Positions 38,750-53,821 of a stretch of 64,000 nt of DNA are shown here, piece by piece. Position 1 is the stretch's first letter, and every line of letters begins with the position of its first letter. This stretch comes from Magallana gigas (lineage: Eukaryota). The DNA lies in the NCBI RefSeq assembly GCF_963853765.1, contig NC_088855.1, forward strand, positions 1,426,001 through 1,490,000. Reading direction: 5' to 3'. The notes under the pieces were generated by a model that saw only the letters and a program-made list of their open reading frames with translations, made no database searches and was not told where the DNA came from. The translations under genes were made by a program, and so were the position numbers.

Positions 38750-39340
38750 CACAGTGTGCATTAAATGCACAAAATAGCCTTTTAAATACGGCATAACTCC
38801 CAAAAATGCACATCTAAACTTTTGTCTTTAACAGCAAACAAAATTCTTATGTCGAAAGTGCCAAAATTTCCAGAAAAATGTTTAAGAGGAAATGCACTTA
38901 CAAACTGTTCATTACTATGTAGTAGTTGGGGCTATATGGACCGTGGATATCGGCCTGGGTAGCTCAGTGGTAGAGCTCCTGACTAGAGTTGCAGGGGTCC
39001 AGGGTTCGATTCCCAGTCCAGCATATGTTTTCATTGTATCTATTTACTCATTCCTCCTTTCCTACTACAACTATATTCAATTTATGGCCAGAATTCTAAC
39101 TTTAAAAGGCCAAATTTCCAGAAAAATAATGGAATGATAAGATTTTTCTGGTAATATGCATATATAAACATTGTGTTCTTTTATCTACAGTTTCTTGAAA
39201 TTCCATGCAGCAGTTTAAGAGGAGTTGCGCCTACAAAAAAAGGAGGATCCGGAATGATGGACAGACTGACTGACTGACTGAGTGACGGCCGGGTCAAAAA
39301 CATTATGTAACCCTTGCAGCTTGTTGTATGGGGTATAAAA
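38750..39340 (+). mobile_element. Degenerate HINE-like fragment ((GACT)n + 3' hairpin remnant) interrupted by a solo LTR
   Basis: (gact)n at about 39262-39283 followed by ...cccttgcagcttgttgtatggggtataaaa. Confidence 0.55.
38918..39069 (+). mobile_element. 152-bp solo LTR with tRNA-derived core
   Basis: TGTAGTAG...CTACTACA 8-bp terminal inverted repeat; ACTA duplicated on both flanks; internal A box (tagctcagtgg) and B box (gggttcgattc). Confidence 0.85.
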
Positions 39341-45587: not shown

Positions 45588-48407
45588 ATGAGTTCAAATA
45601 ACTCATGGATGTTTCTCCAATTTTTGCCGATTTTGGTGATTATCAACACGATAAAGGTAAACTTATATATCATGCTTCTAATTACATGTAAAGCCAGAAA
45701 AATACAGATTTGTTAAAAAGAGCTACGTTGCTAATGAGGCGAACTTGCTCTGATGATTGAGGAACCATTTTAACAAGACCTTAGACTTTCGATAGGACGT
45801 AACTATATATCTATTTCTTGCGTCAAAATAAGTTTAAATGACGCTGGTTTCAAATGAAAAATACACAGATTGCGTAGTCTTAGATCAAAAGCCAGACAAA
45901 ACTTGTTGATTTCAAAGAGCCATGACTGAGTAGCCAGCAATGAAATAGACAGTCCTACGTCATATTGCTGTTTGACACAACTACCCAAAGTCCTCAATGA
46001 ATGGAGAGAGCAACACTCCTATGCTATGGCCTGGTCCTTATTGCCTTTACATACAGCGATCATTTATGGTGGTTCACTACAACTAGTTTCTCAAATCAGC
46101 CAAAATATTACTTCATTATGATAGAAGATAGCGTGACGCATAGAAGAAAATAAGTCAAATAGGCGAAATAATATGCAATTTTGGATTAAAAAAAATATGA
46201 ATTTCAAAAAACTTATCCAGTAAATATGAACAAAAGCCAAAGGCGAATTCGAACTTATGATCTGCGGTTCACAAGCATGATACTGTAACCACTGAGCCCA
46301 GATGATATGCAACCAGTTCGATTGATACAAACAATCTAACAAAACATTTCAATCCCCGTCTTGTGACAAAGTGTCTTAAAAAGTATTCATGTAGTATGGT
46401 ACCTTAATATATGGTCACAATCTCAAGGAAGATTTAATGCAAAAAAATAAATTTCTTGCATGCCAAAAGATACATGCCAAAAAAGAATTTAATGTAAATG
46501 TTAAAATAATTTTTTTTTCTTATAAGGGACAGGAAATGGACTTCGGCGTGAACTATGTGACGTCATACAGTAAGCGGTACGACAAGAGCAGTGGGCTGGT
46601 TCACCTGTCTGTACTGGTGGACGTCCCAGAGTCGGGCCCCACCCTCGCCGTGTACTGGCAAGTCAACGAGGGCGTGGTAGGGGGTGAGCAACATTTAACG
46701 CGGTTTATGTATTCTTTCTGCAATGCTCGCTACCTTTATACCTGCATGAATCATTTAAAAAATATGCACAGTCTTATCAATATCTGAATAGAGCTTTTAT
46801 TATAAACAGTGGATGAATCTTCATTGGGATTATGAACAATGTATATATTTATTAATTATACTTTGATTTTGTGTGTCACCAGTGGATGAAGCTTCGTTTG
46901 GAACATCCCTGACCAGAAGTGGGACACAGACCACCTACTTCCTGGTGGCGGATACATCGTACGTCAGACAGGTCTTCTTCACCACAAAGATGGCGGACAG
47001 GTCCAGCAGCATCCGCTTCGAGTCCTTTGATTGGTCCGAGGACTACCCAAGCCCTTCTTCCTTTCCGATACGCTTCAGCAAATGTTCGTCCACAGCAACA
47101 CTGGGGAATTCACAAGTCCCCGACCAACAAACAATGCGTGTAGACTTCAAATGCAACCCGCCATTTTCTGCAAATTATTACAACTACCCCCGGGTGTACT
47201 GGAATATGAAGTTTGGATTGTACTTATTTAACGACAGCGCAAACACTGTTTATTATAAACCTCTTGAAGAAGAAATCCGCGACAAAAGAGGTGATCTATT
47301 ACTTTCAAGAACACCCAGAAGCTTGAGAAGATTTCCCTCCGACGAGAGAATTCCCGGCGAGGACACTATGGCATTTCCCGGCGAAGACACAAGGCCGTCG
47401 CCAAGAGGGTTAACTCCTTCAAGAAATACCGCTTTGACTGAAAATACATTGTCTCTCCAGCACGAGCTAGCAACAATTACCATTGGGGCAACACCATGGG
47501 CAGAACTCGATTTTTCAAGCACCTTTCTTAAAGAGAATGTTGTGTTTCTGGAGACCACCCTTGATGCCCCTCTTCGCATAGGTCTTGCAATGGTATTTTC
47601 GTTTGTACAGAAAGTTCCAATCAGCAAAGACTTACCTTCTGGGGTATACCTACAGAAGGACGGGGGTAAAACCTTTCCACAGCCTTCCGTCGTGAACTGC
47701 CAAGCCTTCGGGAACAACCCACCTAAGGTGAGCATAACCAAGAACGGCAAAACAGTTACAAAGACTGAGAATATTTCTGTTCAGGAGATTAGGTCACCTC
47801 TGTTTTCTACCTCTTACGTCACCTTCGTAAAGAAAAGTTTGGTTAACAGAGAAGCAGACGGTCAATACAGCTGTTTCTATGACAACCCACAAGGTGACGG
47901 CAAGCTCAGTGATTTCTCCGTCTTAACGAGACCAATCTTCCTGGAAGATCAGACCAGGATGACAGAACAGACTCCAGGGGAGGTAAGTTAATGATACTTT
48001 TACCCTATTTTAAAGAGACATGTAACCTACATGTATATTTAGCTATTCATATCCTCGTCAAACATGAAATACAGTATAAATGTAGAAATGAAAATGTGGG
48101 TATAAAACAGAGAACTGTTGTTTAAATGATAAGCACTGAAGTGTGTCCTCTCTTGCTGTAGCTGGCACTTCGTCTGGTGGTGGAAGGCAATGGACAGATG
48201 GTGGTATCTTGTCATGTTCCGGTCCCAGATCACATGGTCCTGATTAACAAGGCAGAGAAATCGGAGCAGCCGACCACAACAACATTACACCGGAAGGAAG
48301 TGACGCTTACGTACCGATATCCACCGGAAGCCGTGCGGCCATTTGATTACTTTTGTACTGTCCGCGATGAATATGGATACCACAACACACATTACGTCCA
48401 TCGATAA
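45588..48407 (+). CDS. Secreted 523-aa protein with two C-terminal Ig-like domains; join 45588-45656, 46527-46683, 46883-47982, 48162-48407
   Basis: Splice phases 0/1/0 all match. Exon 1 encodes a signal-peptide-like MSSNNSWMFLQFLPILVIINTIK|G. Ig signatures VNCQAFGNNPPKV...DGQYSC and VSCHV...DYFCTV. Stop TAA at 48405-48407. Confidence 0.8.
46068..46403 (-). mobile_element. 336-bp TTAA-type (Kolobok-like) element with tRNA-like core, in intron 1 of the Ig gene
   Basis: ttat-ggtggttcactac ... gtagtatggtacc-ttaa; minus strand ggctcagtgg (A box)...cttgtga...agttcgaattc (B box). Confidence 0.65.
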
Positions 48408-51222: not shown

Positions 51223-52668
51223 TATATAAAGTTCTTTCAAAAATATCCCTCAAAATTTCACATTATGATTGAGGTTTTTTTTTAACTGTGTGAAAAAATT
51301 TAATGGAATTCTAGCATGCGTTCGACCTAAAATTGCCAGGAAAAAAATTGATGAAAACTTCAACTTTAGAGAATATATTGCTATTCATAAATACAATAGG
51401 CTATGCTGTATTCGACCTCAGGACCTACGGACAAGCAGACCATTTAAGGAATGAAATCAATGAATTCAAAATTTACCCAATTTTTACGAGCATAAACTGA
51501 TTATTGACAGTTTACGCTTTATGAAACGAGAAGCAGTTTATAAAAAGGCGTAAATTCTTTGAACCCAGCTTTTATGAGTATAAATTGGGTATATATACAT
51601 GTTGCTAGTTGAATTCACTCCGTATAAATTAATTTTTGGCTATCAGATATAACTGAAGAGACTGCATAAATCTTGGAATTTTATACACAAATGGTTTGGG
51701 GGTAGAGACCTTTTGAGACACCGACATAATTTCTTTCCCAAATCCCTTATATTATATAATTTCTATTTATTTATATTGGCCAGTTGGTTCTATTAAAGAG
51801 GTATATAAAATATATGTATATTACAGAAGGACAGATAACAAAGTGAGCTCAAACAGAACTTTTTTATATGAACAAATACATATAGGTTTCTACACACAGA
51901 ATTAAAAAAAAATAAATGTATAGTTTTTTGTCTTCTATTTAATTATCGTTTAGATCACCATAATTTTTTATCATGATACAACACTTCCTTTAATGGTCAT
52001 GCATTCTAAATAAAAGTACATCTACCATACAGCTTAGCAAAAAGTTATTTTAAACAGATTCATTTCATTTCAGATTACAAGTGCATTATAATTTCTTGAT
52101 ACATGAAATTCCTGTTCGAACCAGTTAAGCTGCGGAGTTTTAGAATTGAACTTCCATGAAAATTAAAAAAAAAAGACACCCACCCTTAACGGACCAACAA
52201 TCCCTATGTTATAATTGTAGAAAACTGTGATATTTCACAGTTAGAAATCAGTTTCGTCAATATTATTAAATTTTTCTAGTCTTAGTTATAAAGGTAAATG
52301 GCAGGTCAGGAGGAAAAAATTCTAAACAGCGTAGGTTTTGTTTTTAAATTCTTACAAAAAGTCATTTTATCCTAAGCATAATATTACTGTTTCTCTTAGG
52401 GAAAACAATAAATGTTTGTCTCCTGAGCCCACATTGTTTAGTGTTTACCCCTACAGACAGCTGTACAGGTATTGGTCAGTTCTCTATCCAAAGCCATTCT
52501 CTATGTTTCCATACCGTTTTCCTAAGGAGACTGGACGGTCAACCAATTAACCATTAGATCTACCTTAAATTATTATATATGATTTTTAAAACTATAAACT
52601 TTTATATCTTGTAAAGAAAAATTCCATTTACTCTGTTAAAAATATAAAATATTCAGAGCTCTTCTTAA

Positions 52669-52998
52669 GGTGGAATAACACACCTGGAAAAAGTCAGTCA
52701 AATTAACAGGAATTTTTTTGATAATGAAAGATATAATGATAAATAAACTGTACAAATGTCAAATAAGCGAAAAATTTGCAGTTTGGGGATAAAAAATGAA
52801 TATCTAAAATAATTACTCCAGAAAGTAACATCAACAGTCCCGGTGGTATTCGAACTCGGGATGTACGGATCACAAGTCCGACACTTTATCCACTCGGCTA
52901 TGGAGTAAATAATGTTTCGATCCATAAAATCTTTTTAATAAAACGAAATGTCGTTTCGATCAGCGGTCAGCCATTTTGTGATGATGTGTTATTCCACG
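52669..52998 (-). mobile_element. 330-bp TTAA-flanked (Kolobok-like) element with tRNA-like core (52838-52903)
   Basis: TTAA on both sides, TIR gtggaataacac/gtgttattccac; minus strand tagccgagtgg...cgga-cttgtga-tccg...gagttcgaat. Confidence 0.8.
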
Positions 52999-53147
52999 TT
53001 AATTAATATAGTCTGAATTAGCCACGACTGTCAAACCCTCTTGAGGAAAAACTATAAACATTTATCTACTAATGGCTTTTAATTGTCACAATTTTTGCCT
53101 CTGAAAAATAGCTTTACAGGTATTGGTCAGTTTAAATATCAGACTGG

Positions 53148-53274
53148 TGTTCGACTATCAATCATTGGCAGCAGTGGTTCAGTGGTTACATCAGAGGTAT
53201 GCCAGAGGTCCTGGGTTCGAGTCTAGATTGAGACTCGGCTTTTCACCACCTGTTACAATTGGCGCCTAACATGG
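53148..53274 (+). mobile_element. Degenerate tRNA-containing LTR followed by a primer-binding site
   Basis: A/B-box-like agtggttcagtgg / gggttcgagtc, LTR end ...cctgttaca (53257), then tggcgcctaacatgg (13/15 match to the Lys-type PBS TGGCGCCCAACGTGG). Left boundary uncertain. Confidence 0.6.
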
Positions 53275-53821
53275 TTTAAAACTGAAACTGCGTTAAATTT
53301 TTACAATATGAAAATGACACTCGGAAAAATGTTGGTAGCCTTTTCCTTACAAGGTTTAGTTAAATATATAATTAGGGGTGTCAACGAGTATTCGAGTACT
53401 TGACTACCGCTCGCTAACGACGATCATAAAGTAAACTTTTCTCTGTTGATTTCTCGTAAAAAAAATACAAAAAATCGAAACATCTGATCATTTATTCAAC
53501 ACCTCAGGTTTTTGGGCTACAAATGAAATTAACGTTTGTCTTTTCTGGGCAATTTTGATCCATTAGTTACAGTCTTTTCCATCGGTCCCCCTGATGTAAT
53601 TATAAGCGACTAATATACTGATGTAATTTGAATTAAAATACTTAGGCATACACGTAATTAGGGATATCACTTTGATGTTTCTTTTTATGTTAAGTATCAA
53701 TTCATTAGTATTTAGATTAGATGTTTTTTTAAATTAAAAATTTAATATATCAATAATTATATCATGGTTTTTATTATAATAAATTAAAGCAGTTCAAAAA
53801 AACATTGAAAAAGTGTCACCT

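What the first reader, a model, noticed from the sequence alone, without database searches (positions are those of the whole stretch)
52665..53002. DNA-transposon-type (TTAA, TIR) elements that carry a tRNA-like Pol III cassette
Seen: three related 330-350-bp elements (36143-36491, 46068-46403, 52669-52998) starting GGTGG after TTAA/TTAT, each with a tRNA-like segment in the same orientation (degenerate in the 36143 copy). The best copy has A box, cgga-CTTGTGA-tccg anticodon arm (TGT, Thr-like) and GTTCGAAT. The CTTGTGA loop is retained in the diverged 46068 copy although the TIR sequences differ. Known: TTAA TSD with short RR-starting TIRs fits Kolobok, whereas tRNA heads are typical of SINEs, not cut-and-paste elements. 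Inference: a family of Pol III-promoter-bearing DNA MITEs (or solo terminal repeats of a KolobokP-like element) in which the cassette is conserved, perhaps to drive transcription or position chromatin. This is my best candidate for an under-described system here.
Basis: partly seen in the sequence, partly recalled or inferred. Interest (0 to 1): 0.7.

Follow-up and report, generated by a model that had tools for sequence, protein, structure and literature searches.

The report
Oyster jumping DNA carrying tRNA relic
A very abundant small cut-and-paste transposon family in an oyster genome carries a decayed threonine-tRNA gene, and only that gene's RNA polymerase III control signals have stayed unchanged between families, so the element may need them; this has not been tested directly.

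Summary
All three elements are real, TTAA-flanked and bounded by GG...CC inverted repeats. They belong to one large lineage of 330-350 bp Kolobok-type MITEs, with at least 1,275 and 1,728 first-look candidates for two families.

The tRNA-like part lies on the minus strand and is in the consensus of every family. It is a decayed copy of the host tRNA-Thr(UGU) gene, captured once together with its TTTT terminator. It is 62-73% identical to the nine genuine genes found in this genome, and the families share derived changes. It is no longer a tRNA: 11-13 of 21 stem pairs remain and it scores below the Rfam threshold.

As a whole the cassette is not clearly better conserved than the left arm, and inserted copies decay neutrally. 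Between the family consensuses, however, the A box, B box and T4 positions show 0 of 22 changes. Other cassette positions show 23 of 53 and the arms 69 of 212.

I read this as a Pol III/TFIIIC site kept in the propagating lineages. That step is inferred, not shown: the RNA data show only passive co-transcription.

The elements are not SINE insertions, and they are probably not KolobokP terminal repeats. I found no published description, and Repbase could not be checked. Other first readers of this scan noted the same kind of element elsewhere in this genome; those notes are unchecked.

The parts
52665..53002 (+). Family A MITE copy with both TTAA target-site duplications (element proper 52669-52998)
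   Evidence: 94.7% identical to the consensus of 30 genomic copies. Similarity ends at TTAA in all aligned copies.
52669..52682 (+). 5' terminal inverted repeat, GGTGGAATAACACA
   Evidence: Read directly. Invariant in most of 30 copies. With TTAA it occurs 328 times in the genome against 0 for the control.
52985..52998 (-). 3' terminal inverted repeat. It is the reverse complement of the 5' TIR; the last base is G in this copy and C in the consensus.
52836..52907 (-). tRNA-Thr(UGU)-derived cassette of the family A copy. Complements on the + strand: A box 52890-52900, anticodon loop CTTGTGA 52870-52876, B box about 52847-52859. The TTTT terminator of the family is lost in this copy.
   Evidence: Sequence read directly. 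Comparison with the family consensus and the genuine tRNA-Thr genes. ARAGORN at a relaxed threshold calls tRNA-Thr(tgt) in the consensus and in most A copies.
46064..46407 (+). Old, diverged member of the family B clade, with TTAT/TTAA flanks (element 46068-46403)
   Evidence: 81% identical to the family B consensus over positions 1-323. Alignment.
46232..46306 (-). Cassette of the 46068 copy. It keeps CTTGTGA, the B box GTTCGAAT and TTTT. The first two A-box positions are mutated.
36139..36495 (+). Oldest copy, about 75% identical to family B, with TTAA/TCAA flanks (element 36143-36491). It contains a poly-G insertion.
36329..36391 (-). Cassette of the 36143 copy. A 12-bp deletion removes the B box. 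The A box (TGGCTCAGTGG) and TTTT are retained.

Best explanation
Shown: the three elements belong to a large, diversified lineage of non-autonomous Kolobok-type cut-and-paste transposons (MITEs) in an oyster genome. They are 330-350 bp long, have 14-16 bp inverted repeats starting GG and ending CC, and make TTAA duplications. An ancestor of the lineage captured, once, a complete host tRNA-Thr(UGU) gene with its TTTT terminator. The gene has since lost its cloverleaf and cannot be a working tRNA.

Inferred: the lineages that kept amplifying retained exactly the signals that recruit TFIIIC and RNA polymerase III: the A box, the B box at tRNA spacing, and the T4 terminator. So the cassette most likely works as a portable Pol III/TFIIIC site, making at most a tRNA-like RNA of about 75 nt. 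That site somehow favours the element's own propagation, for example by keeping the copy in open, unsilenced chromatin where the transposase can reach it. Once inserted, individual copies are under no constraint and decay.
For: - Family structure, TTAA duplications and TIRs.
- Kolobok criteria (TTAA, 5'-RR..YY-3'): PMC9587614.
- Genuine tRNA-Thr(UGU) genes of this genome were recovered by pattern search: nine copies, several with a TTTT trailer.
- The cassettes align to them end to end at 62-73% identity. All families share the same derived states (G37, one extra A in the T loop, one G fewer in the acceptor arm, TAAAG for TAGAG), which points to a single capture.
- Rfam tRNA hits fall just below threshold at the cassette in three A copies. 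ARAGORN at a relaxed threshold calls tRNA-Thr(tgt).
- Between the consensuses of families A, B and C, the A box, B box and T4 positions vary at 0 of 22 sites. Other cassette positions vary at 23 of 53 (p=7e-5) and the arms at 69 of 212 (p=4e-4).
- Only 1 of 319 circular shifts of the mask gives 0 changes; the mean is 7.2.
- The only invariant runs of 9 nt or more in the whole element are the terminator block AACAAAAGC and the B-box block GGATTCGAACTC.
- The B box contains a CpG that decays in inserted copies but is kept in every family consensus.
- The stems decay without compensatory changes, leaving 11-13 of 21 pairs.
Against: - There is no direct evidence of Pol III or TFIIIC binding.
- The poly-A and random-primed RNA libraries show only even, two-stranded coverage of the whole element. 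Reads run out into many different flanks and there are no start or end pile-ups. These libraries would not capture a 75-nt RNA, so the result is uninformative rather than negative.
- The between-family test rests on one deep split (A versus the B clade) and one shallow split (B versus C), so few independent events are counted.
- Other short blocks of unknown role in the left arm are also well conserved.
- Inserted copies show no purifying selection.
- The cassette as a whole is not significantly better conserved than the left arm.
- The sampled copies are the best matches to the window copies, not a random sample.
- The proposed benefit to the element is speculation.
Confidence: 0.55

Rival explanations
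1. Neutral relic. A Kolobok-type MITE picked up a tRNA-Thr gene by chance, through gap repair or template switching as in Pack-TIR elements, and the gene is simply decaying. The invariance of the boxes would then be chance, uneven mutation, or some DNA-level constraint unrelated to Pol III, such as an internal transposase-binding or structural block.
For: - The cassette as a whole is not significantly better conserved than the left arm.
- Inserted copies decay neutrally.
- The cloverleaf is broken.
- Other conserved blocks without a known role exist in the left arm.
- There is no sign of a discrete transcript.
- Few independent lineages were compared.
Against: - The invariant positions coincide exactly with the a-priori Pol III consensus positions and the terminator. 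Only 1 of 319 shifted masks does as well.
- Neighbouring cassette positions of the same composition and alignment quality vary at 43%.
- The B-box CpG, which mutates readily, is kept in every family consensus.
Confidence: 0.33
2. Solo long terminal direct repeats of a KolobokP-like composite transposon, left behind by recombination or moved on their own.
For: - KolobokP is abundant in oysters. Its terminal repeats carry their own 11-18 bp TIRs with RR..YY ends, and solo copies are common (PMC9587614).
- Among the first 100 listed family A sites, two same-orientation pairs lie 5.5 and 7.1 kb apart.
Against: - The lengths are 330-350 bp, against the reported classes of about 450 and 660 bp.
- None of the 88 copies fetched from elsewhere in the genome has a direct partner within 1.5 kb.
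- The two pair spacings differ from each other and exceed the reported element sizes of 4.0-4.7 kb.
- Neither the TIR sequences nor the B-box decamer occur in the paper's supplementary sequences, which do hold nucleotide text.
Confidence: 0.07
3. Independent insertions of a tRNA-derived SINE, or of tRNA pseudogenes, into unrelated MITEs.
For: tRNA heads are typical of SINEs, and bivalves have many tRNA-derived SINEs (PMC11481361).
Against: - The cassette sits at the same position and in the same orientation in all 79 family copies and in both singleton copies.
- It has no target duplication of its own, no tail and no LINE-like 3' part.
- It is followed at once by a Pol III terminator.
- The same derived changes are shared by all families.
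Confidence: 0.01
4. Working tRNA-Thr genes spread by a transposon.
For: A full-length tRNA outline, the anticodon TGT and a terminator are present.
Against: - Only 11-13 of 21 stem pairs survive, and the T stem keeps 1-3 of 5.
- All copies score below the Rfam gathering score, and ARAGORN at default settings finds one hit in 83 sequences.
- Position 37 is G in most families, where the genuine genes have A.
- The genome has its own intact tRNA-Thr(UGU) genes.
Confidence: 0.01

Closest known systems
Non-autonomous Kolobok elements and MITEs (for example the T2-MITEs of Xenopus, PMC6004289; Kolobok families of the Pacific oyster, PMC9587614)
   Same: TTAA target duplication, short TIRs with 5'-RR and YY-3' ends, small size, very high copy number and many subfamilies.
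   Different: An internal, complete tRNA-gene-derived Pol III unit is not mentioned in the Kolobok papers I could read. The matching transposase was not identified here.
tRNA-derived SINEs (for example the bivalve SINEs in PMC11481361)
   Same: A decayed tRNA-derived module keeps the A and B boxes at tRNA spacing while the cloverleaf erodes. Thousands of copies carry a potential Pol III promoter.
   Different: These elements move as DNA, as the TIRs and fixed TTAA show. The module is internal, not at the 5' end. It is followed directly by a terminator, so the element itself would not be transcribed by Pol III. There is no LINE-derived body and no A-rich tail.
Pack-TIR / Pack-MULE elements: DNA transposons that captured host sequence (PMC8277862)
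   Same: A host gene fragment sits between the TIRs of a non-autonomous cut-and-paste element.
   Different: Those reported in animals are mostly single-copy and carry protein-coding fragments. Here a whole Pol III gene was captured and then amplified to thousands of copies in several families. That paper mentions neither tRNA, Kolobok nor oysters.
KolobokP solo long terminal direct repeats (PMC9587614)
   Same: Oyster host, TTAA, RR..YY termini, own short TIRs of 11-18 bp, able to move as small non-autonomous units.
   Different: The length class differs (330-350 bp against about 450 or 660 bp). No composite arrangement was seen, and no sequence match was found in the published set.
TFIIIC-bound boundary elements: tRNA genes, ETC sites and the B2 SINE (PMC3395662, PMC8136502)
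   Same: A B-box-containing unit, possibly dispersed by transposition, that could bind TFIIIC and mark chromatin.
   Different: The similarity is a functional analogy only. No binding or boundary activity has been tested for the oyster elements.

Membership tests
Kolobok superfamily (non-autonomous member) | [quoted passage not shown] | tested here: met
   TTAA on both sides in nearly all of 30 family A and 28 family B copies. Criterion from PMC9587614.
Kolobok superfamily (non-autonomous member) | Termini 5'-RR and YY-3', which distinguish it from piggyBac | tested here: met
   The ends are GG...CC in families A, B and C.
Kolobok superfamily (non-autonomous member) | Mobilised by a Kolobok DDD/E transposase from an autonomous element with matching termini | not tested
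Earlier notes of this scan report intact Kolobok transposons in this genome, but I could not compare their termini.
KolobokP long terminal direct repeat | Length about 450 bp or about 660 bp | tested here: not met
   The consensus lengths are 340, 350 and 349 bp including both TTAA.
KolobokP long terminal direct repeat | Occurs as direct repeats flanking an internal coding region (LTDR-INT-LTDR) | tested here: inconclusive
   No direct partner lies within 1.5 kb of the 88 copies fetched from elsewhere in the genome. Two same-orientation pairs 5.5 and 7.1 kb apart could not be read.
SINE (tRNA-derived) | Pol III head at the 5' end, followed by a body and a LINE-related or A-rich tail; variable target duplications from retroposition | tested here: not met
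   The cassette is internal and is followed by TTTT. The element has TIRs, a fixed TTAA duplication and no tail.
Functional tRNA gene | Passes the tRNA covariance model and keeps the cloverleaf | tested here: not met
   The best score is 27.8 bits against a gathering score of 29. Only 11-13 of 21 stem pairs are kept.
Type 2 Pol III promoter unit | A box TRGCNNAGTGG and B box close to GGTTCGANNCC at tRNA spacing, with a downstream run of four or more T | tested here: met
   All three family consensuses have a perfect A box, the B box AGTTCGAATCC (10 of 11), a 44-nt offset and TTTT directly after the acceptor arm. The consensus motifs are from my own knowledge of Pol III promoters.
Type 2 Pol III promoter unit | Bound by TFIIIC and transcribed by Pol III | not testable with these tools
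   Only poly-A and random-primed libraries could be laid. No ChIP or small-RNA data were available.
piggyBac-type MITE | TTAA duplication with CCC...GGG-type termini | tested here: not met
   TTAA is present, but the termini are GG...CC. PMC9587614 makes this distinction only by giving Kolobok's RR/YY ends; the CCC...GGG motif for piggyBac is from my own knowledge.

The most novel reading that the evidence does not exclude
A DNA transposon lineage whose success depends on an internal Pol III/TFIIIC site. The MITE would carry a stripped-down tRNA gene as a chromatin-opening or anti-silencing module, or as one that helps integration or excision. In doing so it would have seeded thousands of potential TFIIIC sites, and possible boundary elements, across the oyster genome. 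That would be a cut-and-paste counterpart of what SINEs do in mammals.
Probability: 0.3. Interest if true: 0.75.

Novelty: new variant of a known kind. Interest (0 to 1): 0.5.

Why it matters
MITEs are usually seen as passive shells that need only their ends. Here the most constrained part of a very successful oyster MITE lineage is the set of Pol III control signals of a captured tRNA gene, not the terminal repeats.

If those signals are used, this would be a clear case of a cut-and-paste element relying on the Pol III/TFIIIC machinery. It would also be a ready-made source of thousands of dispersed TFIIIC sites in a mollusc genome.

There is a practical point as well. These cassettes will inflate counts of tRNA pseudogenes and SINEs in bivalve annotations.

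If the signals are not used, the finding is an ordinary, if neat, example of host-gene capture by a MITE.

Tried and rejected
- ARAGORN at default settings and Rfam at gathering threshold find nothing at the three window copies. Rfam at E<=10 on the best window copy gives no tRNA hit. The tRNA origin had to be shown through other copies, the family consensus and the genuine genes.
The autonomous partner and the composite hypothesis therefore stay open.
- A search of the KolobokP paper's supplementary sequences for the TIRs and the B-box decamer found nothing.
- A first cassette-count pattern had a wrong gap length and gave only 4 hits. The corrected pattern was run.
- RNA reads gave no discrete transcript. 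One contig joint skipping 52633-53018 was set aside as unreliable: it is a single contig with a 22-base side.
- Nine literature searches found no description of a MITE with an internal tRNA-derived Pol III unit. Repbase and Dfam are not available here, so an existing consensus entry cannot be excluded.
- SINE insertion, a working tRNA and a piggyBac MITE were considered and rejected on the tested features listed under Membership tests.

Full report
**1. The observation**

- 52669-52998 is flanked by TTAA on both sides, starts GGTGGAATAACACA and ends with the inverted complement of that 14-mer.
- 46068-46403 is flanked by TTAT and TTAA.
- 36143-36491 is flanked by TTAA and TCAA.

The three align over their whole length. 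In the 52669 copy it reads, 5' to 3':
- a perfect A box, TAGCCGAGTGG;
- the arm CGGA-CTTGTGA-TCCG;
- GAGTTCGAAT.

The A-to-B offset is 44 nt, as in a tRNA. ARAGORN at default settings and the Rfam tRNA model do not call any of the three.

**2. The host genome and the families**

The window is C3:1426001-1490000 of a 564-Mb assembly in 29 contigs. Public runs that hold the element are labelled oyster.

*Family A.* A genome search with the 52669 copy gave at least 1,275 first-look candidates; the 40 that were scored are 90-93% identical to it. Thirty aligned copies lose similarity exactly at TTAA on both sides and share the 14-bp TIR. The exact 20-mer of TTAA plus TIR occurs 328 times, against 0 for the reversed control.

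*Family B.* The 46068 copy is a diverged member (80-83%) of a second family with at least 1,728 candidates. Its TIR is GGTRCYTCACTACACC, again with TTAA on both sides.

*The 36143 copy.* It has no close relatives and is about 75% identical to family B.

Clustering the 81 distinct genomic copies plus the two diverged window copies (83 sequences) gave family A (30, including the window's 52669 copy), family B (28), a third family C (21, about 87% identical to B) and four singletons, two of them the diverged window copies. Mean divergence from the family consensus is 4-6%.

TTAA duplications with 5'-RR and YY-3' termini are the published signature of the Kolobok superfamily, as opposed to piggyBac (PMC9587614).

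**3. What the cassette is**

A pattern search recovered this genome's genuine tRNA-Thr(UGU) genes. There are nine copies, five of them clustered on C4. They have intact stems, the anticodon loop CTTGTAA and, in several, a TTTT trailer.

The MITE cassettes align to these genes from acceptor arm to trailer. Identity is 73% for B, 70% for C and 62% for A. Shared blocks include CCATAGC, GAGTTCGA and GGGGCTTTT.

All families share the same departures from the genuine gene:
- G instead of A at position 37;
- one extra A in the T loop;
- one G fewer in the 3' acceptor arm;
- TAAAG for TAGAG.

The simplest history is therefore a single capture of a whole tRNA-Thr gene with its terminator, before the families diverged.

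Other support:
- The Rfam tRNA model hits the cassette in three family A copies just below threshold, at 27.8, 24.8 and 22.2 bits against a gathering score of 29.
- ARAGORN at a relaxed threshold calls tRNA-Thr(tgt) in the A consensus and in most A copies.

The cassette is not a working tRNA. Only 11-13 of 21 cloverleaf pairs survive in the family consensuses, the T stem keeps 1-3 of 5, and no compensatory changes are seen.

At least 241 copies in the genome still carry an exact 31-base core of the cassette, against 0 for the control. The matched sequences include forms intermediate between A and B, so more families exist.

**4. Is the cassette conserved?**

There are three levels to this question.

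*(a) After insertion: no.* Divergence from the consensus at non-CpG sites, cassette against the rest of the element, is 4.2% against 3.6% (A), 3.5% against 3.7% (B) and 3.8% against 5.5% (C). Retention of the A and B boxes in individual copies lies within the range of control 11-mers.

*(b) Between families, cassette as a whole: only weakly.* Identity between the A and B consensuses is 75% in the cassette, about 72% in the left arm and 20-60% in the right 100 bp. Among five lineages, 39% of ungapped cassette columns vary, against 48% in the left arm (p=0.2) and 67% in the right arm (p=0.002).

*(c) Between families, within the cassette: strikingly uneven.* The positions specified by the Pol III A-box and B-box consensuses, plus the four T of the terminator, show 0 changes in 22 positions among the A, B and C consensuses. 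Other cassette positions show 23 in 53 (p=7e-5) and the arms 69 in 212 (p=4e-4).

- Sliding the same mask around the element, only the true placement out of 319 gives zero changes; the mean is 7.2.
- The only invariant runs of 9 nt or more in the whole element are the terminator block and the B-box block.
- The only A-box differences between families fall on its two unspecified positions.
- The B box holds a CpG that decays in inserted copies, yet it is kept in all family consensuses.
- The TIRs themselves differ between families at 12 of 32 positions.

**5. Expression**

I laid four RNA runs (two of raw reads, two of contigs) on 52300-53400 at 88% likeness. They cover the whole element on both strands. 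Reads run out into many different flanks at 52665 and 53002, there are no pile-ups of starts or ends, and the flanks of the window copy are almost silent.

This is what copies embedded in other transcripts would give. Poly-A and random-primed libraries would not capture a 75-nt Pol III product, so the result says nothing about the promoter.

**6. Interpretation**

*Shown:* a large Kolobok-type MITE lineage carries a once-captured, now decayed tRNA-Thr(UGU) gene in every copy.

*Inferred from the pattern of change:* the lineages that went on amplifying kept the Pol III control elements and let the rest go. This points to TFIIIC/Pol III recruitment being useful to the element rather than to the host. 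Because the T run follows the cassette directly, any transcript would be a short tRNA-like RNA, not the element itself. So the benefit is more likely to come from factor binding (open or insulated chromatin that leaves the ends accessible) than from the RNA. That last step is speculation.

The main rival is a neutral relic whose box invariance is chance or reflects another DNA-level constraint. I give the functional-site reading 0.55 and the relic 0.33.

*The KolobokP solo-repeat idea is unlikely:*
- The lengths do not fit the reported classes of 450 and 660 bp.
- No direct partner lies within 1.5 kb of the 88 copies fetched from elsewhere in the genome.
- The two same-orientation pairs seen among the first 100 listed sites have different spacings, both too large.
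- The published KolobokP sequences contain neither the TIRs nor the B-box decamer.

*Independent SINE insertion is excluded.* The position and orientation of the cassette are fixed, the derived changes are shared, and there is no tail and no separate target duplication.

**7. Novelty**

Capture of host sequence by TIR elements is known (Pack-MULE; Pack-TIR, PMC8277862). Decayed tRNA modules that keep the A and B boxes are the hallmark of SINEs. A high-copy cut-and-paste family built around a complete Pol III gene, with its control elements the best-conserved part, was not described in any paper I could find. Repbase and Dfam could not be consulted.

Other first readers of this scan noted the same kind of element on other windows of this genome (s1-385508, s1-356127, s1-382451, s1-388693). 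Those notes are unchecked and do not count as independent support.

I class the finding as a new variant of a known kind, with interest 0.5.

Noticed in passing
window 38917-39069 (tRNA-like at 38953-39023, + strand): This is a second, unrelated tRNA-like sequence, and the only one in the window that passes the Rfam tRNA gathering score (32.6 bits). ARAGORN gives it an odd 4-base anticodon. It is part of a unit of about 153 bp with at least 566 candidates in the genome, 90-96% identical, often in short tandem arrays with a period of about 260 bp.
   Followed up: partly
L038:1156-1802, L039:1501-2147, L044:1267-1818: Family B and family C type copies lie head to head in inverted orientation, 20-45 bp apart. 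They occur at two independent places; L038 and L039 are duplicates of one locus. This could reflect insertion next to an existing copy's TTAA or a foldback-like arrangement.
   Followed up: no
G000 C2:35254971 and 35260453; C3:53399806 and 53406931: Two pairs of family A copies lie in the same orientation, 5.5 and 7.1 kb apart, among the first 100 listed sites. That is slightly more than the roughly 0.3 expected by chance. The sequence between them could not be fetched.
   Followed up: no
window 36271-36294: The oldest copy has a run of about 24 bases, almost all G, where the other families have an A-rich stretch.
   Followed up: no
L089:1491-1935: A family B copy is split by an insertion of about 97 bp between consensus positions 89 and 91.
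   Followed up: no
genome-wide (matched sequences listed): Some cassette variants are intermediate between families A and B, for example GGTTAAAGTGT with the A-type anticodon arm. The lineage therefore has more families than the three characterised here.
   Followed up: partly
element columns 161-188 of the seven-lineage alignment (window 52810-52835 in the family A copy): The block next to the terminator, ATTCAGTAAA.ATGAAC on the + strand, is as well conserved between lineages as the cassette itself (0.80-0.84). Its role is unknown.
   Followed up: no
window 52632/53019: One RNA-run contig (X10, depth 31, 22-base side) joins 52632 to 53019 and skips the element plus about 48 bp. It is too weak to call an empty site.
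   Followed up: no
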